In this document: positions 3,106-36,167 of the stretch, in pieces
Numbering within the stretch: position 1 is the stretch's first letter
How the letters are laid out: the number at the start of each line of letters is the position of its first letter
Source of the DNA: Macrostomum lignano
Lineage: Eukaryota
Direction: 5' to 3'
NCBI GenBank assembly: GCA_002269645.1
Contig: NIVC01000730.1
Coordinates: 1 to 64,000 of the forward strand
Length of the DNA stretch: 64,000 bases
Program-made: the position numbers and the translations under genes
Notes under the pieces: generated by a model
What the model saw: the letters and a program-made list of their open reading frames with translations, nothing else
The model's database searches: none
Told to the model about the DNA's origin: nothing

Positions 3106-6100
3106 ATGGCCCAAGCTTTGCAACTCACTGCACCAGATGCATTTGATATCGATAGCGATCCACTCACACGAGCCCAGAGATGGAAGACTTGGGCACGGAG
3201 GTTCAATAGCTACATTCGCGCTGCTGGCATCACAGATGCGACACAACAGCTGGAGTTGCTGGTCTACACAGCGGGAGAGAAGTTGGAAGACTTTATGGAA
3301 GACAACAGTGTTCAAAAAGGAAAATCTACAAACGAGCTCATCCAAAAGCTACAAGAGATCTTCGACCAGAAAAACAGCGTCGTCTTCCTCCGGTACCAGT
3401 TCGAGACCTGCAGACAGGAGGAGGGGGAGTCCATCGATGCGTGGTACCATCGGCTGCGCAAGGCCGCGGATCAATGCGAATTCGGAGAACTACGGGACTC
3501 TCTCATCAGGGACAAGGTGGTCGCCCACTACCGATCGGAGAAGATCAGAAGGGAGCTCCTTCAGCTGAACGATATCTGTCTAGCTGACGTACTGAAGCGA
3601 ATCCGAGCAAGGGAAGCTGCGGAGCAACAGGCTCAGGCCATGGAAGAAAACAGCTCAGGTGGCGCCGCCGCCATGACGACCGCGAACGTGGCTGTTGCTC
3701 CGTTCTCGCCCACCCCGAGCACGACCGTCGCAGCCATTCAGAAGGGATCCTGCAATGAAGGACGGTGGCATCAGCTGCGAGCGCTGCGGACGGCCGGGTC
3801 ATCGAACGTGCGAGGCTGCTAGAGACAAGGCATGTCGACGCTGCGGTAAGATTGGCCATTTCGCCCGGGCATGTCGGGGAACGTCCAGAATACCCGTGAG
3901 AGCTGTCAACGAACCGGACGATCGCTCCTACGGGCAAGTCGAATATCTGCAGGACAACTCCACTGAGCACGAGCTTTTCAGCCTCCGAAATAGCGGATCA
4001 GCATGGACTCAAGCCACCGTCAACGGATTCAAGACAACCCTGCTTATCGACAGTGGAGCGGCCTGCAACATCATCGACAGGGAGGCCTTCAAAAGGATGC
4101 CACAGAAGGCCAGGCTCCAAGCAGCCAGTGATCGGGTCTATCCCTATGGAAGCCAACAGCCACTGAAGCTGCTCGGCAAGACCGACCTACAGGTCAGCGT
4201 TTTCGGTTGCCAGGAGACGCTTCCGTTCCTGGTGCTGGACGGAAAGGGTGCTTGCATAATAGGCCGCAGGAGCGCGGAAGACCTAGGAGTTCTGCGAGTC
4301 GGCCCGGAAGACAAGGCAGCGTGTGAGCTACGCTCGGAGTGTCCGACTGACAGGCTGCTAGCCGGCGTTCCAAAAGACCTTCGGCAGTCCCCAGGTGCTC
4401 CATCTTTAGACGAAATCCTCAAGGAAAATGCACAGGCCTTCGACGGAATCGGCTGTCTTAAGAACTACGCAGCCCGCATCTTCCTGGAAGAGGGCGCAAG
4501 ACCAGTGTGCCATCCACCATCAAGAGTGCCAATTCACCTCGCCCCAGCAGTGGACGCCGAGCTCCAGTACCTAGAAGAACAAGGCATCATTGAGCCAGTG
4601 GAGGGACCCTGCCCGTGGGTTTCTCGTATCGTCGTCGTCCCCAAAGAAGCTCCTGGCGAGATCAGGATCACTCAGGATCTGAGGGAGCTAAACAAGTCTG
4701 TCGTCAGGGAGCGACACCCAATACCGACCTTTGAGGAGGTAACAGGCGACATGGCAGGAGCGACGCTGTTCTCAGAGTTGGACGTCGCAAAAGCATTCTA
4801 TCAAATCCCTGTGTCAGAGGAGTGCCGGCATCTTCTAACTTTTTCAACGCCTCGAGGTCTTCGGCGGCTGACGAGACTCTGCATGGGGCTATCAACGGCG
4901 CAGGAAATTCTTCAAGCTGTTATGTCATCCGTGCTGGCTGGACTTTCAAAAGTAAAATGGATCCACGATGACATTATTGTCTATGGCCACAGCGTGGCGG
5001 AGCATCACAACAATCTGCGGGAGTGCCTCCAGCGGCTGGCGCAGCACGGACTGACGCTCAACCCGGCCAAGTGCAAGCTGGCGCGAACGCAAGTCACCTT
5101 CATGGGGATGCGACTGTCGAGGGCGGAGTCAGGCCAACCGAGTCAAAGCTAGAGGCAGTTAATGCATTTGCAGAGCCAACGAATGTCACGGAGGTGCGCT
5201 CGTTCTTGGGACTTGTCAACTACCTGGCCGCATTCACCCCGAGGCTGGCGGACCTGGCAAAGCCGCTGCGCAACCTGACAAGGAAGGGCCAGCCCTGGGC
5301 ATGGGCCGATCTGGAAAGACAAGCCTTCAGCGACATCAAGTCTCAAATCGCGTCAAGTGGCTCTCTTGCCTTTTTCAACCATCGCCTTCCGACGCAACTC
5401 ATTGTCGACGCTGGGCCAGCGGGGCTGGGTGCAATCCTGTCACAGACACAATCGGACGGAACCAGGCGGCCCATCGCATACGCTAGCCGGACACTGTCGG
5501 ACGTTGAGCAACGCTATTCCCAAACAGAGAAAGAGGCGTTGGCCGTGAAGTTCGGCTGTTTAAAGTTTCAATTCTACCTCCACGGCGCGCCGATGTTCAC
5601 GGTGCAAACCGACCACAAGCCACTGGTTGCTCTGTTCGGCAGCAGTTCGAGACCCCCTCCGAGAATCGAAAGGATGGCATTGCGCATTCAGCATATGAAA
5701 TTCACAGTCGAGTACCAGCCGGGCCCGCTCAACCCGGCAGACGTGCTCAGCCGACAGCCACTGCCGACACCCGCACCGAATGTGGGCGAAGAGCTGGATG
5801 CACTTTCCATCGCCGCTGTTGTACAGGCGGCCGTACCAAATGCGCTGTCACTGACCAGCGTACAGAACAGCTCGCAAAAGGACGCAACAATTCAAGCGGC
5901 GATTCGCGTCTTAGAGACAGGGCGGTGGAGCCTGGAGTCAGCAGAACTGCGGTCGCTGCATGCGCTGCGTCACGAACTGTCGGCAGTGGACGGGGTGCTC
6001 CTACGGGGCCAGCGGATCATCGTCCCGGTGGCGCTCCGACGGCTTGTACTGGATCTAGCGCACCGGGGGCACCAGTGCACACGTAAGACGCTGGACCGGC

Positions 6101-12215: not shown

Positions 12216-12841
12216 GATTTTGCCATAGACAAAGTCATTCCTGCACGGCAAGTTAAACGAGAAACGAAGACGAAAATTTCGGAGTGAGGGGTTGGAAAGG
12301 TTTATAAAAGCTTAATTCAGCTTTAACGATGGCTTCTGTAATCCACTTGTCTCAGAATCCGCCATTAATTGATTTGTGCTACGCAACAGTGTGTGATGTA
12401 GTGAAGAATGTCTATCGAAGCTACTTACAGCAACTTAGAGAGGTCCCAAGGCGAGCTTTTGTATTCTAGGTTACGGTTTTCATTACATATTTGTGTTGAA
12501 GTTTGTTTACATACAGCTAAGACGTTATTAACGTTTACTTTAATCAACAGAATGGCGCAGCGCAACGCTCTGACTGGAACAATTCGCCGGAGTCAAGTTA
12601 TACCTTAGACGAAGCATCTGAAAGGCGGCTGTTGCGACTACGAGTACCATCCCGTTTGGATCAGCGTCAATTTCAACTGTCAAGAAGTCATTCGTTGTTA
12701 AAGAGTCATCAATTACCACTAGCAGCTGCTTCAAATAGGCGGATGAATATTTAGGCAAATGGCGAAACAAATGTTTTGCAGTTCAATCCCACTGCAGAGC
12801 AGAATCAAGCGTGCAGAATCGATTTTGTCTATGGCAAAATC
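12216..12841. mobile_element. Non-autonomous TIR element (MITE) related to the Crypton-like fragment
   Basis: Left GATTTTGCCATAGACAAAGTCATTCCTGCACG (12216) versus reverse complement of the right end GATTTTGCCATAGACAAAATCGATTCTGCACG (12810-12841). The internal 5' part is homologous to 7638-7870. More inverted motif copies continue to ~13040. Confidence 0.75.
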
Positions 12842-13646
12842 TCCTTTAGGTCTAATGAATCATACATGTAGTAGGTGCAGGATTGAAATTTATTTTTACA
12901 AATTGAAAAGACAACAAAAATAAAGTGCAGGATTGATTTTGTCTATGTTTGAACTTCATGGTCTATAATTAAGATACTCGTAGAATCAATTAAGAATGAG
13001 ATTCATGAACGCTAACTCGGGCGTCTATGGCAAAAATGACGCTTTTGCCAATGACGCACTCGTTAGCATTATAGAATCTACATTTTCAAATAGATTTCGA
13101 GAAAGATTTGAGTGTGGATTAACTATTTGCTTTTTTATTTTCATCTTCTAAGTTTATCTGTTGCTTCTAAAAATTCAATAATCTGACCTTTCAGGAATGA
13201 TTTCTTTATTCCTGCGCGATTAGTTATTTTTTCAAGAGAGTTTTTACCATAAATTCCCGCACGCTTTGGTCAAATGACAATGCAATTTGCTCAGCTTAGA
13301 AGCAAATTTGCAATGTTTTAAACAACCTAAACGAAATAAATTACACGAATATATAACGTCGACAACCATGAAAAACTATTTATATATTTCTGCATCTTCG
13401 AATAATTATAATCTTGATTGGAGTCTGTTAAATTAAATACTTCTACATCTACATGTAGAAAGGTAATTGAGAATCAGGCCTGCCTTCCCCGTTACTAGAA
13501 GTTTATGTTTTTGACAGCTTATAATTTTTATCTCTAGTTCACTGTTAGTCCAAGTTTTTGTTTAAACGTTTCCCTCCAGATGGGTAAACATGCCACGACT
13601 CCTGGTTCCAGTCCACGAGCAGTCACATTCATGATGTTCACATTCA

Positions 13647-26196: not shown

Positions 26197-27714
26197 ATGA
26201 TGAAGTTCTCCCTAGTAATTGCCGTTTTTGCCTGCACCTTTTGCCTTGCCGTGAGCGATAAAGTGAAGTTCAAGGACTGCGGTAAGTGGATCTAATAAAG
26301 AAAACTATACTGGAAACTATTTATTTCCTGCTTCTGTGAATTAACTTTTTGGCCGTTCACAATCTTTCGATTTCGACGCAACGATCTCAGTTAGCCAATT
26401 TGTCTGACACAGGACCCTCCATTAGCAGTGTCTATGACCCTCCATTATCCAGTGTCTATGAACCTCCATTAGCAGTGTCTATGACCTTCCATAGCCAGTG
26501 TCGATGACCCTCCATCAGCCAGTGTACGATCCTTAATCAGCTAGTGTATGACCCTCCATCAGCCAGTGTATGACCCTCCATTAGCAGTGTCTATAACCCT
26601 CCATTAGCCAGTGTCTATGACCCGTCATTAGCCAGTCTATGATCCTCCATTAGCCAGTCTGTGATCCTCCATTAGCAGTGTTTCTGAGCACCCATTAGCA
26701 ATGTGTCTGACCCTCCATTAGCAGTGTCTTTGACGCTTTATTTTCCAGTGGCTATGACCCAGCATTAGCAGTGTCTATTACCCTCCATTAGCCAGTGTCT
26801 ATTACCCTCCATTAGCCAGTGTCTATAACCCTCCATTAGCCAGTGTCTATAACCCTCCATTAGCCAGTGTCTATTACCCTCCATTAGCCAGTGTCTATTA
26901 CCCTCCATTAGCCAGTGTCTATAACCCTCCATTAGCCAGTGTCTATGACCCGTCATTAGCCAGTCTATGATCCTCCATTAGCCAGTCTGTGATCCTCCAT
27001 TAGCAGTGTTTCTGAGCACCCATTAGCAATGTGTCTGACCCTCCATTAGCAGTGTCTTTGACGCTTCATTATCCAGTGGCTATGACCCAGCATTAGCAGT
27101 GTCTATTACCCTCCATTAGCCAGTGTCTATGACCCATCATTAGCAGTGTCTAAGACCCGCCATTAGCCAGTGTCTATGACCCTTTATAAGCAGTGTTTAT
27201 GAGCACCCAGTAGCAGTGTCTATGACCCTCCATAAGCCAGTGCCAATATGATCCTCAATTCCGCAGGCTCAACAGCCGGCAAGATCGTCAGCGTGGACAT
27301 CAATCCCTGCCCGAAGATGCCGTGCGAGTTCAAGCGCGGCACTAAAGTTGGCGCAAGCATCACCTTCCAATCCTCGGAAGCGTCCACCGCAGTCAAGTCC
27401 GTGGTGCATGGCATCCTCGGTGGCATCCCGGTGCCTTTCCCGCTACCAGATTCGAACGCTTGCAACACGATGAGCCCGAAATGCCCCCTGGAAACTGGCA
27501 GTCAATACGTGTACACCAACCAGCTAGAAGTACTGCAGTCTTATCCATCGGTAAGAGGCATGCAAAAAACCGCAACTCGTCTCTGTAACCTTCAGTATTA
27601 ACTGTCAATCCTCTCCCACAAACATTCCAGCTCGCCGTGTTGGTCAAATGGGAACTGATTGATCCCAACAGCAAGGATTTGGTCTGCTTTGAGATTCCCG
27701 TCAGGATTGTTTAA
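26197..27714 (+). CDS. NPC2: Niemann-Pick C2 / ML-domain sterol-binding protein, 150 aa
   Basis: Exons 26197-26281, 27267-27550 and 27631-27714. Signal peptide MMKFSLVIAVFAC, VKFKDCG, PCPKMPCEFKRG, VHGILGGIPVPFP, VKWELID...LVCFEIPV. Confidence 0.96.
26415..27240. repeat. ~22-24-bp minisatellite (CCAGTGTCTATGACCCTCCATTAG)n in NPC2 intron 1
   Basis: Tandem units plus an internal block duplication with ~330-bp offset. Confidence 0.92.
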
Positions 27715-28144: not shown

Positions 28145-30746
28145 TTACACAGGAACATTGGCATACTTGGCATAGGCCTTATTATTAATCTTCTGAAGAA
28201 TATAGCCCAATTGTTGACCGGGACCAACTTCGTAGACGTTTGGTTGCGGCGTATCGGAGCGTCGTCTAGTGAGAGAGGTGACTATCTGGTGCCATTTCAC
28301 ACTGGAGTGCATCTGCTTCACCAACAGCTTTGCTATGGACTCAACTGTGCGGGGCGGTTTCACAGCTACATTTGAGTAAACTGGAATTCTAGGCACCCGA
28401 ATAGTGCACTTGTTCAGAGCTCGGGTCAGAGTCTTGGCTGCCGGGTACATCAGATCCGTGTGGAAAGCGCCGCTCACTTCTAGCGGCTTGCAGGAGGCGA
28501 TGCCAAAGTCTTTATGATGCTGTTGGATGTACTGCATTGCCTGGTGTGAACAGTGTTAATAGTATTCGGTAAGCTGAGATGCCATGGCTCAATGGGGGAG
28601 CTGCTGAGATGCCAGGGCTCAATGGGGGAGCTGCTGAGATGCCATGGCTCAATGGGGGAGCTACTGAGATGCCATGGCTCAATGGGGGAGCTGCTGAGGT
28701 GCCATGGCTCAATGGGGGTTGCTGAGATGCCATAGACTCAAGGGGGGTTGCTGAGATGCCATAGACTCAAGGGGGGTTGCTGAGATGCCATAGACTCAAG
28801 GGGGTTGCTGAGATTCCATAGACTCAAGGGGGGTTGCTGAGATGCCATAAACTCAAGGGGGGTTGCTGAGATGCCATAGACTCAAGGGGGGTTGCTGAGA
28901 TGCCATAGACTCAAGGGTAGTTGCTGAGGTACCATGGCTCAATGGGGGGTTGCTGAGATGCTATAGACTCAGGGAGAGCTGCTGAGATGCCATAGACTCA
29001 AGGGGGGGGGGGTTGCTGAGATGCCATAGACTCAAGGAGTTGCTGAGATGCCATAGGCTCAAGAGAGAGTTGCTGAGATGCCATAGACTCAGTGGGAGTT
29101 GCTGAGATGTCATAGACTCAAGGGGAGTTGCTGCGATGGAATAGACTCAGGAAGAGTTGCTGAGATGCCATAGACTCAAGGGGGTTGCTGAGATGCCATA
29201 GACTCAAGGGGGGTTGCTGAGATGCCATAGACTCAAGGAGGAGTTGCTGAGAGGTCATAGGCTCAAGAGAGAGTTGCTGAGATGCCATAGACTCAAGGGG
29301 AGTTGCTGCGATGGAATAGACTCAGGAAGAGTTGCTGAGATGCCATAGACTCAAGGAGGAGCTGCTGAGAGGTCATAGGCTCAAGAGAGAGTTGCTGAGA
29401 TGCCATAGACTCAGGGAGAGTTGCTAAGATACCATGGCTCAAGCGGGGCGCTGACTAAAGCCTTGAATGTCTTTGAAAATGCTGTTTTATGCTTTAAGTA
29501 CCAGTATCTTTCCTTTTTCTTTCTACTGTAATTGAAATTTAACAAAAGTGATTTTGAGCATTATACAGCTTAAGGCAATACCCATACCTCTCGATGACCA
29601 GCCAGCACAACACACCTGGCATACAGGTGGCTAGCCACATTGCACACAGGCCGAATCATGGCGTGTTTAGTCTGGCAGTGGTCTCTGGCAGCTTTCATTG
29701 CTTTGCCAATATCGGCGTCAGCTGTCAGCAGGCAGGTGGTCATGCCGCCAGGGATTTGATCGCTCACCGATTGCATGGCCTGAGCTCGGACCTGTACTAG
29801 GCGAAGGCCTGTGGGAGATGGGAGAGGCAAAGAGATGAGGATAGATTGGACTACAATACAAATAAAGATATACATGTATTAGACTACGAATAAAGACAGA
29901 TTAGACTAAGAATAAAGACAGATTAGACTAAGAATAAAGACAGATTAGACTACAAATAGTGACAGATTAGACTACGAATAATGGGATTAGACTCCGAATA
30001 GACAGATTAGACTACGAATAATGGGATTAGACTACGAATAATGGGATTAGACTACGAATAAAGACTAATTAGACTAAAAAGGATTAGACTATAAAAATCC
30101 TATTATTTTAGGTTAAGACTACTTTTATGCTATATAGTTACACTACGAAAGCACAACACAAAAAGGCATCTGATGGAGAATGCAACCAGAACTCACCCTC
30201 TTCAAAGGTGAAAGTACCAGCAAAAGTGTAGGCGGCAAACTCTCCCACACTGAATCCAGCGGTGCCAATGCACCTGGGCACAGCATCCGGATGGAGCTCC
30301 TCCAGAGCCAGCAAAGCAGCCATTGAGGTGACAAAAATGGCCGGCTGACTAAACTGAGTCAAGGCTAATTTACGCTCGGGCCCAGACAGGCACAGTTTGA
30401 GCAGATCGTACTTCAACACCTCGCTAGCGTGCTCAAATACCTCTTTAGTTCGGGGAAATTGCAACAGTTTAGATCCCATGCCGACGAACTGACTGGCCTG
30501 GCCAGGGAACAGAATGTAGCTGGTGTCTGCCGGGTCCACGCCTTCGGGACCGCGGTAAACAAAATCCGTGTGCGCTTCGTACTGAGGCCCGGTTGGCTTC
30601 GCTTCTGCGCTACTGCTGTCGTTGCTAGGGACGCTGGTTTCAGTTGCTAAGCAACGCTTTGTCGAGTTAAATATGCCGGGAAATCGGCATGCTGCGCAAA
30701 ATAATCGGCGACTTATTGCTGTCGAGGCCATTGGTAATTCTCTCAT
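28145..30746 (-). CDS. MCAT: Mitochondrial malonyl-CoA:ACP transacylase
   Basis: Exons 30746 (or 30731)-30197, 29808-29588 and 28540-28145 are phase-consistent. Motifs LFPGQASQFVGM, QPAIF, AGFSVGE (catalytic Ser), VSGAFHT, YEVGPG; N-terminal presequence-like region. Confidence 0.95.
28572..29450. repeat. ~29-30-bp minisatellite (GCTGAGATGCCATAGACTCAAGGGGGGTT)n in MCAT intron 2
   Basis: Tandem units are visible. Confidence 0.93.
29858..30095. repeat. ~21-bp degenerate minisatellite (GATTAGACTACGAATAAAGACA)n in MCAT intron 1
   Basis: Tandem units are visible. Confidence 0.85.
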
Positions 30747-30780
30747 CAATTTGAAGGTCAACTAAAGTGAAAGGTCTGGC

Positions 30781-31820
30781 AAAATCGCCCCTCAAACACC
30801 CTCTGGAATCGCCCCTGAAACAGCCTCTGGAATCGCCTCTCAAGCACCCTCTGAAATCCCCCTAAAACACCCTCTAGAATCGCCCCTCAAACACCCTCTG
30901 GAATCGCCCCTGAAACACCCTCTGGAATCGCCTCTCAAGCACCCTCTGAAATCCCCCTAAAACACCCTCTAGAATCGCCCCTCAAACACCCTCTGGAATC
31001 GCCCCTGAAACACCCTCTGGAATCGCCTCTCAAGCACCCTCTGAAATCCCCCTAAAACACCCTCTAGAATCGCCCCTCAAACACCCTCTGGAATCGCCCC
31101 TGAAACACCCTCTGGAATCGCCTCTCAAGCACCCTCTGAAATCCCCCTAAAACACCCTCTAGAATCGCCCCTCAAACACCCTCTGGAATCGCCCCTGAAA
31201 CACCCTCTGGAATCGCCTCTCAAGCACCCTCTGAAATCCCCCTAAAACACCCTCTAGAATCGCCCCTCAAACACCCTCTGGAATCGCCTCTCAAGCACCC
31301 TCTGAAATCCCCCTAAAACACCCTCTAGAATCGCCCCTCAAACACCCTCTGGAATCGCCCCTGAAACACCCTCTGGAATCGCCTCTCAAGCACCCTCTGA
31401 AATCCCCCTAAAACACCCTCTAGAATCGCCCCTCAAACACCCTCTGGAATCGCCTCTCAAGCACCCTCTGAAACCCCCCTAAAACACCCTCTGGAATCGC
31501 CCCTCAAACACCCTCTGGAATCGCCCCTCAAACACCCTCTGGAATCGCCCCTCAAACACCCCCTGGAATCGACTTTGAAACACCCTCTGGAATCGCCACT
31601 CAAACACCCTCTGGAATCGCCCCTCAAACACCCTCTGGAATCGCCCCTAAAACACCCTCTAGAATCGCCACTCAAACACCCTCTGGAATCGCCACTCAAA
31701 CACCCTCTGGAATCGCCCCTCAAACACCCTCTGGAATCGCCCCTCAAACACCCTCTGGAATCGCCCCATAAACACCCGCTGGAATCGCCTCATAAACACC
31801 CTCTGAATCGCCACCCCCAA
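30781..31820 (+). repeat. 24-bp minisatellite (GAATCGCCCCTCAAACACCCTCTG)n, left arm of an inverted pair
   Basis: Tandem units with a 95-bp higher-order repeat (24+24+24+23) in the outer part. Confidence 0.96.
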
Positions 31821-32001
31821 ACATCCTGTCTGTCTGATGTCATACGTATGTGTAGATAAAAGTTAAATCAAAGTTAAAGATTTAAGCTGAGTTAAACTTC
31901 AGACGCAAATGCCAGTTTAATATTATATTTACAACAAAAGACAATTATCAATCGACGATTCGAGCGTTCACAAAACTGCCAAAAACGAATGCATTTAAAA
32001 A

Positions 32002-32319
32002 TCAATCTTTCCAAACGAAGGCGCACTTGGCGCATCGATACTTGGTAGTCATGGGCTCGTCAGCTGATCTAGTTTGCATCTGAACAAAGTAGCACTGCAT
32101 GTGAGAGCATTCCGGACAGCGCTCTTCTGTGGTAGCCGCATTCTTCCAAGCATCCTCGCCGCCGAGAATATCATCAATCTCTTTCAATTGTGGGTATTTT
32201 GTCTGCTCCATCGCGCACAGCACGTTGTAGATGTAGGGGCAGGAGCTGCAGGCGAATCTGTAGCACCGATCGCCCAGCTCCAGCCGGAGCAGATTTGAGC
32301 AGTTTGGACAAAAGTGCAA
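32002..32319 (-). CDS. POLR3K: RNA polymerase III subunit RPC10/C11
   Basis: HFCPNCSNLL...FACSSCPY, EIDDILGG, CPECSH, QMQTRSADEPMT, YRCAKC. The first codon at 32319 is TTG directly after the acceptor TTTTAG, so the initiator Met must be supplied by splicing or by non-AUG initiation. Confidence 0.95.
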   Translation of the reverse strand: MHFCPNCSNLLRLELGDRCYRFACSSCPYIYNVLCAMEQTKYPQLKEIDDILGGEDAWKNAATTEERCPECSHMQCYFVQMQTRSADEPMTTKYRCAKCAFVWKD

Positions 32320-32329
32320 CTAAAATGAG

Positions 32330-33205
32330 AGGTGTTTGGCGATTCCAGAGGGTGTTTGAGGGGCGATTCCAAAGGGTGTTTGAGTGGCGATTCCAGGGTG
32401 TTTGAGGGGCGATTCCAGAGGGTGTTTGAGGGGCGATTTCAGAGGGTGTTTGAGTGGCGATTCCAGGGTGTTTGAGGGGCGATTCTAGAGGGTGTTTGAG
32501 GGGCGATTCCAAAGGGTGTTTGAGTGGCGATTCCAGGGTGTTTGAGGGGCGATTCCAGAGGGTGTTTGAGGAGCGATTCCAGAGGGTGTTTGAGTGGCGA
32601 TTCCAGGGTGTTTGAGGGGCGATTCCAGAGGGTGTTTGAGGAGCGATTCCAGAGGGTGTTTGAGTGGCGATTCCAGGGTGTTTGAGGGGCGATTCCAGAG
32701 GGTGTTTGAGGAGCGATTCCAGAGGGTGTTTGAGGGGCGATTCCAGGGGGTGTTTGAGGAGCGATTCCAGAGGGTGTTTGAGGGGCGATTCCAGAGGGTG
32801 TTTGAGGGGCGATTCCAGGGGGTGTTTGAGGAGCGATTCCAGAGGGTGTTTGAGGGGCGATTCCAGAGGGTGTTTGAGGGGCGATTCCAGAGGGTGTTTG
32901 AGGGGCGATTCCAAAGGGTGTTTGAGGGGCGATTCCAGAGGGTGTTTGAGGGGCGATTCCAGGGGGTGTTTGAGGAGCGATTCCAGAGGGTGTTTGAGGG
33001 GCGATTCCAGAGGGTGTTTGAGGGGCGATTCCAGAGGGTGTTTGAGGGGCGATTCCAGAGGGTGTTTGAGAGGCGATTTTAGAGGGTGCTTGAGGGGCGA
33101 TTCCAGAGGTGTTTGGCGATTCCAGGGGAGTTTGAGGGGCGATTCCAGAGGGTGTTTGAGAGGCGATTTTAGAGGGTGCTTGAGGGGCGATTCCGGAGGG
33201 TTTGA
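32330..33205 (-). repeat. Same 24-bp minisatellite in inverted orientation (CAGAGGGTGTTTGAGGGGCGATTC)n, right arm
   Basis: The unit is the reverse complement of the 30781-31820 unit. Confidence 0.96.
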
Positions 33206-33467
33206 GTCGTGATACCAGGGGTTGTTACTCAGCTGACGGGGTTGCTCAGTTACGCATTAAATAATTGACAAAATCGTATATAATTTGCACAAACTTTGTA
33301 AGTTGTTTGAACCGAATATATTTTTAAAGAAGGAACTAAGAAGTTGACACCAATAAAGATGAACGATAGTGACAAAAATTAATTGTGAACTGAATTTTGT
33401 GACATTGATAATTATACACAAAAATGCTTTTACAATTTTGTAACCGAAACATTTATGAACCTTTTTT

Positions 33468-33660: not shown

Positions 33661-34158
33661 TTAGCTAGTAGGCAGTTCACTCAGCATTACCGACAGCTGG
33701 TGAATGAGTTGAGAATTGCCGGATGCTAAACGTTTTATAACAGCATTCAACTGGTTGACCTGCTCAATCAGCTGTTTCGCTTCGCCGGTTTTTGCAGCGG
33801 AAGCGGCTTCAATAGATTCTGGTGCCTGCTCGTCTGGAATGTCACCTTCTAGAGGCAGCAATCTGATGGGATCAGGCTGGGCCACTTGCTTACTAGCCGC
33901 TGCAACTCTGGTGTACACAACTCGAAGTCGCTTTAGTTTTTGCTCTAACGAGTTAACCAGATCGGTGAGAGCTTGCCGCTGCTGATGAAGCGGAGCCTGA
34001 GACTGTTGAGAACCACCAGTGAGACTGCTCTGGGTCGGTCGATAGAATGAGCAAATATCCGACACCGATTGAAGTATTTCAAAGACCAGATCGCTGCCTT
34101 CTTGACAGAGTGCGCCCGATTCAATCAGGTTCAGTGGAGCCGGCTGGTCTGTTGCCAT
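33661..34158 (-). CDS. MED30: Mediator subunit 30 (intronless)
   Basis: ALCQEGSDLVFEIL, KLKRLRVVYTRV, LLPL and QLIHQLSVML align from memory with MED30 motifs (SLCRIGQETVQDIV, FRKLRLVY, LIPY, LIWDINAML). An alternative in-frame ATG lies at 34182. Confidence 0.8.
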   Translation of the reverse strand: MATDQPAPLNLIESGALCQEGSDLVFEILQSVSDICSFYRPTQSSLTGGSQQSQAPLHQQRQALTDLVNSLEQKLKRLRVVYTRVAAASKQVAQPDPIRLLPLEGDIPDEQAPESIEAASAAKTGEAKQLIEQVNQLNAVIKRLASGNSQLIHQLSVMLSELPTS

Positions 34159-34244
34159 GGCAATTAAGGATTTAAGTGTCATGAAATGAGGCAAAAATTA
34201 TAGATCGATCTAAGACCCAATAATATTTATAATAATTGATTAAA

Positions 34245-34603
34245 CCTGCCCTAATTGGCAGATGTGCAACCGACAGCTCAGCCGCAGCTATTGCGCAGCG
34301 CATCTGAAGGTTGCGTACGGCTGTTCAGTCCAAGGACTGGGGGGGGGGTGGTCGCCAACACACACCCTCAGTTATCCCAGCTAATGCTGGCACCCATTTT
34401 GCAGCTGGGTGAGCTGAAGCAATGCAGAGCTACGTGTCTTGCTCAAGGATACAAACTGTTACAGTGGGATCGGGAATCGAACCCCCGACCTTTAAGTCGT
34501 GAGTCCGACGCTCTAACCACTAGGCTACAACCCCCTTTGTTCCAATGGGATCGGGAATCGAACCCCCGACCTTTAAGTCGTGAGTCCGACGCTCTAACCA
34601 CTG
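34245..34603 (-). mobile_element. tRNA-derived SINE with a tandemly duplicated head
   Basis: On the minus strand, A box TAGCCTAGTGG and B box GGTTCGATTCC, followed by a central TATCCTTGAGCAAGACAC...CACCCAGCTGCAAAATGGGTGCC block typical of conserved-core SINEs. The head is repeated at 34546-34603. Confidence 0.85.
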
Positions 34604-34960
34604 GGCTTTGTTTCATTCATTTTCACTTGAAGTATCGAATACTTAATTTTAAAATACTTGAAACTCTTGAGACCTCCAGACTTATAAAGTGGAGATCGCA
34701 AATTATCTACAACTTCTGCGTGTGGGTCAGAGGGGCTCTGCAGTGTAGAGGGTAAGGTAGAGACTACGAAACCAGCTTCTATCACAACCTACTTAGGAAT
34801 GTATCAAGTTGCAACAAATAATAACCAAATTAAACACTAAAACAGAATTTCTCATACAGTTTTAAACACAATCAGCTCTTATATTTGAATAAAATTGAAC
34901 TACGAGAACTAACATCAGTTTCTACAGTCAGTCTTAGGATTGTTTAGCATTACAGACAAT

Positions 34961-36167
34961 CTAAAACTTCGGCTTAATGTTGCCGCCCGACTTGATATCA
35001 ATTTTAGCCAGCAGATCCGCATGGTAACCAGAGCGTCTGGCTAATTTCAATTGCTGTTCAATTTTCTGAACCGGATCAGAGCCAAACGTGCGCAGCTTCA
35101 TATGATGCAGCTGCTCTTGAAATTCTGCTTCTTTCTTCTTCTCCCGCAGCAGGCGTTTATCGCGCAGCATTGCCGCGCAACGCTTGCGAAACTTCTTCAA
35201 TTGGTGGCGTTTCATTCTGCGGCGCCGGTTGACAATGTCCAGGTGACCGCGGGGCCAGATTATGGTTCTGGTAGGCTGGGTCATTGCTGCGGCTGCTTCT
35301 AGTAGCAACCGATTGGGTCTCGGCTGGATTGGACTGCAGCAAATTGAGGAATATTGTCGAGAAATTGTTGACGCCAGGCCCAGCTGTGGCTTTGTTGAAA
35401 GGCCTGTGAAAATTATTTGATTTATGCGTTTATAGTTATTAGGAAATTATTAAGAATATTGAAGTAGGTATGACTATTTAGTTAGCAAACCTCCACAATC
35501 CTCAAATCTTCGCACCCCTCAAATCTTCGCAATACCCAAATCTTCGCAATACCCAAATCTTCACAATACCCAAATCTTCACAATACTCAAATCTTCACAA
35601 TCACTTAAATCTTCACAATCACTTAAATCTTCACAATCACTCAAATCTTCACAATCACTCAAATCTTTACAATTACAATCCCTCAAATCTTCAAATCCCT
35701 CAAATCTTCACAATCCCTCAAATCTTCACAATCACTCAAATCTTTACAATTACAATCCCTCAAATCTTCACAATCCCTCAAAATCCTTACAATCCCCAAA
35801 CTTTCACAATTTCCCAAATCTTCACTATCTCAAACTCTTCACAATAGTCAAACCTTAAAAATCCTTTAATTCTTCACAATCCGCAAATCTTCACAATCCC
35901 TCAAAGCTTCAAAAATCCTTCAAATATTTGAAATCCCCCAAATCTTCACAACCCCTCAAATCCCGACTAACTAAAATTGGATGCATTCGAACATGACGAT
36001 GCGTGAAGTTTTTGCTGTTGCTGGCACACTAGAAGGCCCTGCTGCATGCAGATGGTTGGCCTCTCAAATATGACGGCACTGCCCATTGCTTGCTGGTTGC
36101 CAAATGCTAGTGCTGAAGAAGCACTGGTCAATAGTCGAGACGCTGTCAAACGTGCTGCAGCAAGCAT
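34961..36167 (-). CDS. AURKAIP1: Mitoribosomal protein mS38 / Aurora kinase A-interacting protein, 212 aa
   Basis: Exons 36167-35972 and 35403-34961 (phase 1). Presequence MLAAARLTASRLL; DUF1713-type basic motif IVNRRRRMKRHQLKKFRKR...REKKKEAEFQEQL. Confidence 0.82.
35495..35962. repeat. ~18-bp minisatellite (CAAATCTTCACAATCCCT)n in the AURKAIP1 intron
   Basis: Tandem units are visible. Confidence 0.88.

What the first reader, a model, noticed from the sequence alone, without database searches (positions are those of the whole stretch)
32300..33270. POLR3K has no in-frame ATG: initiator Met possibly donated by the spliced leader
Seen: the conserved N-terminus begins TTTTAG|TTG CAC TTT TGT (L-H-F-C); orthologs start M-L-x-F-C, so exactly one Met codon is missing. 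The nearest upstream ATG with a donor (ATGC|GTAACT, ~33257) is phase 1 and would put the CDS out of frame. Established: flatworm SL exons end in AUG, which can serve as the initiator. SL-AUG + TTG CAC gives MLHFC precisely. The MCAT acceptor (30761, TTG ACC TTC AAA TTG ATG) and AIG1 acceptor are also in frame with an SL AUG, whereas at AURKAIP1 the AUG would be followed directly by TGA.
Basis: partly seen in the sequence, partly recalled or inferred. Interest (0 to 1): 0.72.

Follow-up and report, generated by a model that had tools for sequence, protein, structure and literature searches.

The report
Flatworm POLR3K borrows its start codon
In the flatworm Macrostomum lignano, two of three genomic copies of the small RNA polymerase III subunit gene POLR3K have a splice-acceptor TAG where the third copy has its ATG, so their start codon is most likely supplied by the AUG at the end of the trans-spliced leader, a mechanism already known in flatworms.

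Summary
The window is Macrostomum lignano Mlig_3_7 scaffold NIVC01000730.1. On the minus strand, 32319..32002 encodes an intact single-exon POLR3K/RPC10 from codon 2 (LHFCPNC…WKD*). An in-frame TAG lies directly upstream and doubles as a good acceptor (cattttAG|TTG).

Two further subgenome copies were found:
- L006 has the same TAG|TTG.
- L002 has a genomic ATG at exactly that position (cattcATG TTG) and no nearby AG.

All 7 coding differences among the three copies are synonymous, and 4 of them lie on the branches of the two start-less copies (P about 0.002-0.008 under neutrality). That argues these copies are translated.

The published M. lignano spliced leader ends in ...TTGCATG. Joined at this acceptor, it gives MLHFC…, identical to the L002 product.

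An extra T in the assembly is excluded, because three contigs read TTGCAC. No ATG|GT lies within 4.4 kb upstream.

No RNA evidence could be reached, so trans-splicing at this site is inferred, not shown. Use of the SL AUG as initiator has been known since Cheng et al. 2006. This is a new example of that mechanism, with an instructive ATG/TAG difference between homeologs. Interest is moderate.

The parts
32002..32319 (-). POLR3K/RPC10 coding exon: codons 2-106 (LHFC...WKD) plus the TGA stop at 32004-32002. Single exon with no genomic start codon.
   Evidence: Identical protein in L002 and L006.
32320..32322 (-). TAG: an in-frame stop and, at the same time, the AG of the proposed SL trans-splice acceptor (ttttAG|TTG). 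The homeolog L002 has ATG at this exact triplet.
32323..32337 (-). Short pyrimidine-rich spacer (ccaaacacctctcattt) between the repeat array and the acceptor. Pyrimidine fraction 0.67 over -20..-3.
32338..33201 (-). Upstream array: 36.7 copies of a 24-bp unit (CCTCAAACACCCTCTGGAATCGCC on the gene strand). It has no ATG and few AG on that strand. Proposed outron / intercistronic sequence.
   Evidence: Only 3 AG between 33229 and the acceptor.
33252..33257 (-). Rejected: phase 1, weak donor (GTAACT), and ACGC in L002.
31813..32001 (-). 3' flank / probable 3' UTR of POLR3K. Nearly identical in the three copies (0-1 substitutions in about 209 nt).
30783..31812 (+). Downstream array of the same 24-bp unit in inverted orientation (43 copies), ending 21 nt before the MCAT acceptor.
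30762..30763 (-). AG of the next acceptor (cactttAG|TTGACC). It opens the MCAT gene on the same strand and is in frame with an SL AUG, but that gene has its own downstream ATG.
33661..34194 (-). Upstream same-strand gene (Med30 domain). It is 1340 nt from the POLR3K acceptor, or 476 nt after subtracting the array.
   Evidence: Operon criterion from PMC8629364.

Best explanation
The window's POLR3K copy, and its near-twin on NIVC01000305.1, is a functional gene with no start codon in the genome. Its pre-mRNA is probably part of a Med30-POLR3K-MCAT polycistronic unit whose spacers are swollen by a 24-bp minisatellite. The precursor is SL trans-spliced at ttttAG|TTG. The 35-nt M. lignano spliced leader ends in ...UUGCAUG, and that AUG, the only one in the leader, lands in frame directly before codon 2. 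The capped mRNA then reads AUG UUG CAC UUU UGU = MLHFC... and yields a full-length 106-aa RPC10.

The third homeolog (NIVC01004936.1) keeps the conventional state: a genomic ATG at the same triplet and no acceptor. The three copies therefore show a start codon exchanged for an acceptor (CATG versus TTAG) with no change in the protein.

Shown: the sequence states, the in-frame fit, the identical proteins and the synonymous-only divergence.
Inferred: that trans-splicing happens at this AG, and that ribosomes start at the SL AUG.
For: (1) TAG|TTG with an intact 105-codon RPC10 ORF.
(2) The same state on an independent contig, L006.
(3) L002 has ATG at that exact triplet and encodes MLHFC...WKD, identical to SL-AUG plus the window exon.
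(4) There are 7 variable codons among the copies and all are synonymous (63.7 synonymous against 251.3 nonsynonymous sites). Four of the 7 lie on the terminal branches of the two TAG copies, giving P = 0.002-0.008 for kappa 1-10. There are no indels in the CDS, although the flanks have them.
(5) The M. lignano SL ends in ATG. About 30% of genes are trans-spliced, with enrichment for conserved genes. The acceptor motif is [T/C]TNCAG, and operon spacers are inflated by repeats with a repeat-adjusted threshold of 1 kb. Here the adjusted distances are 476 and 209 nt (PMC8629364).
(6) SL-AUG initiation is established in flatworms: Cheng et al. 2006, as quoted in PMC9851317 and PMC12582326. Macrostomum workers already treat the terminal ATG as a likely start codon (PMC10468722).
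(7) The acceptor is the first AG after 165 nt (window) or 561 nt (L006) of AG-free pyrimidine-rich sequence.
Against: No RNA evidence was reached. The exact 105- and 106-aa products are absent from the protein collection, and no published table that I could read lists this gene.

The acceptor is TAG, not the preferred CAG. The Kozak context of the SL AUG is poor (U at -3).

The selection test rests on only 4 substitutions. It would be weakened if gene conversion from L002 has kept the TAG copies clean: three window-specific sites cluster at codons 49-68, where L006 equals L002.

A functional ATG-bearing copy exists, so the organism does not strictly need the TAG copies.
Confidence: 0.75

Rival explanations
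1. The window copy and L006 are start-loss, non-functional homeologs in a neopolyploid genome. The ATG was mutated to TAG, and only the L002 copy makes RPC10. The fit with the SL is then a coincidence.
For: M. lignano carries three about 2%-diverged subgenomes, so redundancy is plentiful (PMC10733133). An ATG-bearing copy exists. ATG to AAG is 1 of the 9 possible single-base start-loss changes, so an AG at that spot is not very improbable on its own. No transcript evidence was found.
Against: All 4 substitutions on the TAG-copy branches are synonymous (P = 0.002-0.008). There is no indel or stop in 318 nt in either copy, while the flanks carry indels. The change is three adjacent bases (CAT to TTA) that also lengthen the pyrimidine run into a textbook ttttAG. 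Both TAG copies keep it. L002 is also the copy that lacks MCAT next door, so it does not look like the best-preserved locus.
Confidence: 0.12
2. A cis-spliced upstream exon, not the SL, supplies the ATG. It would be either the reader's ATGC micro-exon or another exon upstream.
For: ATGC|GTAACT is present in both TAG copies and is ACGC in the ATG copy. A few upstream ATGs have phase-0 GT sites.
Against: ATGC is phase 1 and gives a 62-aa out-of-frame product. TTGCAC is read on three contigs, so there is no spurious T. The phase-0 candidates have poor donors (GTCTTA, GTTTTC, GTGTAT, GTGTCA, GTTCAC) and would add 5-34 residues to a conserved N-terminus. One of them is disrupted by an insertion of about 140 bp in L006. 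There is no ATG|GT within 4.4 kb, and the nearest lies beyond two other genes. The count of 5 against about 10 expected is no more than chance. The ATGC/ACGC correlation is a single change on the same branch.
Confidence: 0.05
3. Translation starts at the UUG itself (near-cognate initiation), giving MHFC... without any donated AUG.
For: 3 of 26 orthologues start M-x-F-C, so a protein one residue shorter is tolerable. Non-AUG starts are documented in SL organisms (PMC9851317).
Against: UUG is a weak initiator, and the context here is poor (U at -3, C at +4). If the acceptor is used, an AUG sits directly in front anyway. The homeolog spells out ATG TTG, showing that Leu2 is an internal codon.
Confidence: 0.05
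4. Assembly or sequencing error at the start codon.
For: Mlig_3_7 is a PacBio-based assembly of a repeat-rich polyploid, and 36% of its length is in chimeric scaffolds (PMC10733133).
Against: Two independent contigs carry the identical 40 nt around TAG|TTG. The difference from L002 is a three-base substitution, not the homopolymer indel typical of long-read error.
Confidence: 0.02

Closest known systems
Flatworm SL 3'-terminal AUG used as initiator methionine (Cheng, Cohen, Ndegwa & Davis 2006, J Biol Chem 281:733; called 'slORFs' in PMC9851317)
   Same: The SL ends in AUG. The acceptor lies directly at codon 2 of a conserved ORF. There is no genomic in-frame AUG. The SL AUG restores the orthologous N-terminus. 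PMC9851317 reports that in S. mansoni the SL AUG is in frame in 28% of trans-spliced transcripts and that more than 40 cDNAs require it.
   Different: This is a different species, a free-living basal flatworm in which SL-AUG use has only been remarked on in passing (PMC10468722). The case is inferred from the genome only. It also comes with an internal control, a homeolog that still has its own ATG at the same triplet, which I did not find described in the papers read.
POLR3K / RPC10 (yeast C11), the TFIIS-like RNA-cleavage subunit of RNA polymerase III
   Same: Both zinc ribbons are present, along with the QxRSADEP acidic hairpin, a length of about 106-108 aa and an M-x-x-F-C-P-x-C N-terminus.
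   Different: Only the way the first codon is supplied differs. The protein itself is ordinary.
SL-resolved operons of M. lignano (Ustyantsev & Berezikov 2021, PMC8629364)
   Same: Med30, POLR3K and MCAT lie on the same strand with repeat-adjusted spacers of 476 and 209 nt, below the paper's 1-kb criterion. The spacers are filled by simple repeats, as that paper describes.
   Different: Here the two spacers are the same minisatellite in inverted orientation, bracketing the middle cistron. That feature is not mentioned in the paper.

Membership tests
POLR3K/RPC10 (C11) | N-terminal RPB9-type zinc ribbon (two CxxC pairs) | tested here: met
   PF02150 scores 27.6 bits against a cut-off of 25.2. 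C4, C7, C24 and C27 are invariant in a 29-sequence alignment.
POLR3K/RPC10 (C11) | C-terminal TFIIS-type zinc ribbon with the acidic hairpin (RSADEP) | tested here: met
   PF01096 scores 61.6 bits against a cut-off of 21. Q82, R84, S85, A86, D87, E88 and P89 are invariant.
POLR3K/RPC10 (C11) | Closer to Pol III RPC10 than to RPB9, RPA12 or TFIIS | tested here: met
   Human RPC10 E = 5.6e-40 and yeast RPC10 E = 1.7e-24, against RPA12 at 1.8e-09 and RPB9 at 2.1e-08.
SL-AUG-initiated flatworm mRNA (Cheng et al. 2006 type) | The organism's spliced leader ends in AUG | tested here: met
   The SL sequence from PMC8629364 ends ...TTGCATG, and that is its only ATG. The organism is confirmed as M. lignano.
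SL-AUG-initiated flatworm mRNA (Cheng et al. 2006 type) | An AG acceptor placed so that the SL AUG is in frame with the ORF, with no intervening stop | tested here: met
   ttttAG|TTG CAC; the model transcript translates to 106 aa.
SL-AUG-initiated flatworm mRNA (Cheng et al. 2006 type) | No genomic in-frame AUG able to give the conserved N-terminus | tested here: met
   An in-frame TAG lies directly upstream. The next in-frame AUG is codon 37, past the first zinc ribbon. No usable cis exon was found.
SL-AUG-initiated flatworm mRNA (Cheng et al. 2006 type) | The SL is physically joined at this site in mature mRNA | not testable with these tools
   No M. lignano transcript data were reachable.
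SL-AUG-initiated flatworm mRNA (Cheng et al. 2006 type) | Translation initiates at the SL AUG | not testable with these tools
   There is only indirect support: synonymous-only divergence of the start-less copies.
M. lignano operon (PMC8629364 criteria) | Same-strand neighbours with a repeat-adjusted intergenic distance below 1 kb | tested here: met
   1340 - 864 = 476 nt and 1239 - 1030 = 209 nt (criterion).
M. lignano operon (PMC8629364 criteria) | Downstream genes carry mapped SL reads | not testable with these tools
   The SL-read track is on gb.macgenome.org and is not available here.

The most novel reading that the evidence does not exclude
The three subgenome copies capture a start codon being handed over to the spliced leader. 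After polyploidisation, one lineage converted CATG to TTAG. A possible route is ATG to AAG, a single T-to-A change that destroys the start codon and creates an acceptor at exactly the position where the SL's AUG restores it. Both forms now produce the same protein from differently processed mRNAs. In addition, the inverted minisatellite arrays flanking the cistron, conserved in all three copies, might form a dsRNA stem of about 0.9 kb in the polycistronic precursor and so influence which acceptor is used.
Probability: 0.45. Interest if true: 0.55.

Novelty: new member of a known kind. Interest (0 to 1): 0.38.

Why it matters
**Annotation.** Pipelines that trim the SL, or that require a genomic ATG, will miss or truncate such genes. 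Here an essential Pol III subunit has no full-length protein on record for any of the three copies. The automated call is a 96-aa fragment.

**Evolution.** The ATG/TAG difference between homeologs is a natural experiment. It shows that an SL ending in AUG makes a gene's own start codon dispensable, and that a start codon and an acceptor are mutually convertible by very few mutations. This bears on the long-standing question of why flatworm SLs conserve their terminal AUG.

**Testability.** M. lignano has working transgenesis, so the prediction can be tested directly.

Tried and rejected
**Transcript evidence**
- Exact look-ups of the 105- and 106-aa products were negative.
- The Med30 cluster holds only NCBI genome-derived members, so no M. 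lignano RNA assemblies appear to be in the collection.

**Published tables**
- The supplements of PMC5816591, PMC5730564, PMC5173321 and PMC10733133 contain no POLR3K entry, no neighbouring gene IDs and no scaffold IDs.
- PMC8629364 has no supplements held.
- The primary paper, Cheng et al. 2006, is not held. It is cited through PMC9851317 and PMC12582326.

**Cis micro-exon and other upstream exons:** rejected.

**Extra-T assembly error:** rejected.

**Retrocopy idea (L002's ATG as a relic of a reverse-transcribed SL-mRNA):** considered and dropped. The sequence upstream of L002's ATG is homologous to the window's spacer and repeat rather than to the SL, and there is no poly(A) remnant after the 3' flank.

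**SL RNA gene in the window:** none. Rfam at gathering threshold: nothing.

**Polarising ATG versus TAG with an outgroup:** the only closer relative found (L003/L004) is an unidentified marine organism. It is 74% identical over the 61-aa fragment P0030 and 63% over the full ORF. It has a genomic ATG 5 nt after a ttttcag, but its N-terminus (MVNFC) is too diverged to align at the DNA level. Because every non-trans-splicing eukaryote must encode the ATG, parsimony favours ATG as the ancestral state, but this remains an inference.

Full report
**What is there**

The window is the first 64 kb of NIVC01000730.1 from GCA_002269645.1. Window and record coordinates coincide. [quoted passage not shown] Neighbouring proteins carry M. 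lignano GenBank names.

On the minus strand the sequence reads ...ggaatcgccaaacacctctcattttag|TTGCACTTTTGTCCAAACTGC.... From 32319 down to 32005 there are 105 sense codons, LHFCPNCSNLLRLELGDRCYRFACSSCPYIYNV...AKCAFVWKD, followed by TGA.

The product is unmistakably POLR3K/RPC10:
- Human RPC10 matches at E = 5.6e-40 and yeast RPC10 at 1.7e-24.
- RPA12, RPB9 and TFIIS match far more weakly.
- Both zinc-ribbon Pfam families pass their cut-offs.

The triplet immediately upstream (32322-32320) is an in-frame TAG, so the exon cannot be extended upstream. Between that stop and the first zinc-binding Cys there are only the codons TTG, CAC and TTT. The next AUG in the exon is codon 37, beyond the N-terminal ribbon.

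The software prints the TTG as M because it uses table 11. That is an artefact.

**The two other copies**

M. lignano is a neopolyploid whose assembly holds three subgenome versions about 2% apart (PMC10733133). I found both other versions of this locus.

- **L002 (NIVC01004936.1)** reads ...caccctttcattcATG TTG CAC TTT TGT CCC AAC TGC... It has a conventional genomic ATG at exactly the triplet where the window has TAG. Its nearest upstream AG lies 456 nt before codon 2.
- **L006 (NIVC01000305.1)** was reached through the third Med30 paralogue. It reads ...cacctctcattttAG|TTGCAC..., identical to the window.

The start-less state is therefore present on two independent contigs and cannot be a local assembly error.

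Flank identities give the tree ((window, L006), L002): window-L006 97.4%, window-L002 95.7%, L002-L006 94-96%. The difference at the junction is three adjacent bases, CAT to TTA. It turns ATG into TAG and also extends the pyrimidine run to ttttAG.

**Are the start-less copies alive?**

The three coding sequences differ at 7 codons (5, 16, 23, 36, 49, 52, 68), and every difference is synonymous. The three proteins are identical from Leu2 to the stop.

The CDS has 63.7 synonymous and 251.3 nonsynonymous sites. A random substitution is therefore synonymous with probability 0.20-0.30 for kappa 1-10.
- P(7/7 synonymous) is 1e-5 to 2e-4.
- For the 4 changes on the terminal branches of the two TAG copies (3 in the window, 1 in L006), P is 0.002-0.008.

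Neither copy has an indel in 318 nt, although the flanks do.

This is the main argument that the TAG copies are translated, and so obtain an AUG from somewhere. The caveats are that 4 changes is a small number and that gene conversion from L002 could mimic constraint.

**Where the AUG can come from**

*(a) The spliced leader.* M. lignano has a single 35-nt SL, CGGTCTCTTACTGCGAAGACTCAATTTATTGCATG.
- About 30% of genes receive it, preferentially conserved genes.
- Acceptors carry [T/C]TNCAG.
- About 15% of genes sit in operons whose spacers are inflated by repeats. The mode is about 100 bp after subtracting repeats, with an operational threshold of 1 kb (PMC8629364).

The SL's only ATG is its last three bases. 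Joined at ttttAG|TTG, it gives AUG UUG CAC... = MLHFC...WKD, 106 aa, letter for letter the product of L002.

The context fits an operon. Med30 (33661-34194), POLR3K and MCAT (acceptor at 30761) are on the same strand. The spacers are 1340 and 1239 nt, or 476 and 209 nt after removing the minisatellite arrays. The POLR3K acceptor is the first AG after 165 nt (window) or 561 nt (L006) of AG-free sequence.

Its donor is weak, and L002 has ACGC. Other upstream ATGs have only poor phase-0 donors and would add 5-34 residues. One of them is broken by an insertion in L006. No ATG|GT exists within 4.4 kb, and the nearest lies beyond two other genes.

*(c) UUG initiation.* This is possible in principle, because M-x-F-C N-termini exist. 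However, the context is poor, and the homeolog spells ATG TTG.

*(d) Nothing.* In this reading the TAG copies are dead and L002 does the work. The synonymous-only pattern and the acceptor-improving nature of the three-base change count against it.

My estimates are SL-AUG 0.75, dead copies 0.12, cis exon 0.05, UUG 0.05 and error 0.02.

**What is shown and what is inferred**

Shown:
- the sequence states in three copies;
- the exact positional replacement of ATG by an acceptor;
- the identity of the predicted SL-initiated product with the genome-encoded one;
- the synonymous-only divergence;
- the published SL sequence.

Inferred:
- that trans-splicing occurs at this AG;
- that ribosomes start at the SL AUG.

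I could not reach any RNA data. The exact 105- and 106-aa sequences are not in the protein collection, and the Med30 cluster has only genome-derived members. The supplements of four M. lignano papers do not mention the gene or the scaffolds.

**Comparison with what is known**

That the flatworm SL's 3'-terminal AUG can serve as the initiator methionine was established by Cheng et al. 2006. [quoted passage not shown]
- PMC12582326 calls the terminal ATG a key feature of all reported flatworm SLs.
- The dedicated M. lignano SL paper does not analyse SL-AUG use.

This locus meets every sequence-level criterion of that class. The two RNA- and protein-level criteria could not be tested. I therefore file it as a new member of a known kind.

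What seems worth recording beyond that is the homeolog contrast. A plausible route is TATG to TAAG to TTAG. The single T-to-A step would kill the start codon and at once create an AG at the only position where the SL AUG restores the same protein. All eukaryotes without trans-splicing encode this ATG, and the nearest relative I found (L003/L004, of unknown taxon) does too. ATG is therefore the more parsimonious ancestral state, but the direction is not proven.

**Verdict**

The mechanism is already known. Interest is moderate (0.38), mainly for annotation practice and as a clean, testable example of start-codon outsourcing in a transgenesis-capable model.

Noticed in passing
window 30783-31812 and 32338-33201; also L002:3046-3486 / 4062-4532 and L006:11076-12177 / 12722-13276: The 24-bp unit CCTCAAACACCCTCTGGAATCGCC occurs in the window only as two arrays of about 0.9-1.0 kb in inverted orientation, bracketing the POLR3K cistron. 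Each array ends about 20 nt before a trans-splice acceptor (POLR3K and MCAT). All three homeologs keep this arrangement. A model precursor folds into a long stem that loops out POLR3K (MFE -464 against -265 kcal/mol for shuffles, z = -23). Its function, if any, is unknown.
   Followed up: partly
L002:3850-7490 compared with window 28145-30761: The L002 homeolog has no MCAT (Acyl_transf_1) gene call between POLR3K and the NPC2-like gene, and the window's MCAT 5' sequence is not found there. This suggests gene loss (fractionation) in that subgenome copy. I did not check for remnants.
   Followed up: no
window 30744-30746 compared with L006:13320-13322: The first ATG after the MCAT acceptor in the window (TTG ACC TTC AAA TTG ATG) is CTG in L006. 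The frame from the acceptor stays open in both copies up to the next ATG (CCA ATG GCC). This is compatible with, but does not require, initiation at the SL AUG for MCAT as well.
   Followed up: partly
window 32002-32319, L002:3530-3850, L006:12193-12516: No full-length POLR3K protein is on record for any of the three M. lignano copies. The only call is a 96-aa fragment starting LLRLELG, and L006 has no call at all, whereas the neighbouring Med30 paralogues on L002 and L006 carry GenBank PAA accessions. This looks like an annotation gap caused by the missing or unusual start.
   Followed up: partly
window 34457-34607: An 81-bp unit repeated 1.9 times contains a tRNA-like arm (GGGAATCGAACCCCCGACC). 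It may be a tRNA-derived SINE or pseudogene. Rfam found nothing at gathering threshold.
   Followed up: no
window 26413-27242, 28573-29448, 29878-30076, 35486-35962: There are several further unrelated minisatellite arrays (periods 24, 29, 22 and 18 bp) in and around the MCAT and AURKAIP1-like genes. This illustrates the high tandem-repeat load of introns and spacers in this genome.
   Followed up: no
L003:1-480 (Logan ERR14224704) and L004 (TARA metagenome scaffold): An unidentified AT-rich marine organism carries an intronless POLR3K. It is the closest relative found outside M. lignano: 63% identity over the full length and 74% over the 61-aa fragment P0030. It has a genomic ATG 5 nt after a ttttcag acceptor-like site. 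If its SL also ends in AUG, trans-splicing there would create a short overlapping uORF.
   Followed up: no
window 31813-32001 and the homeologous flanks: The roughly 200-nt 3' flank of POLR3K has only 0-1 substitutions between copies. Synonymous sites of the CDS show about 11% differences and the 5' unique spacer 3-5%. This suggests constraint on the 3' UTR.
   Followed up: partly
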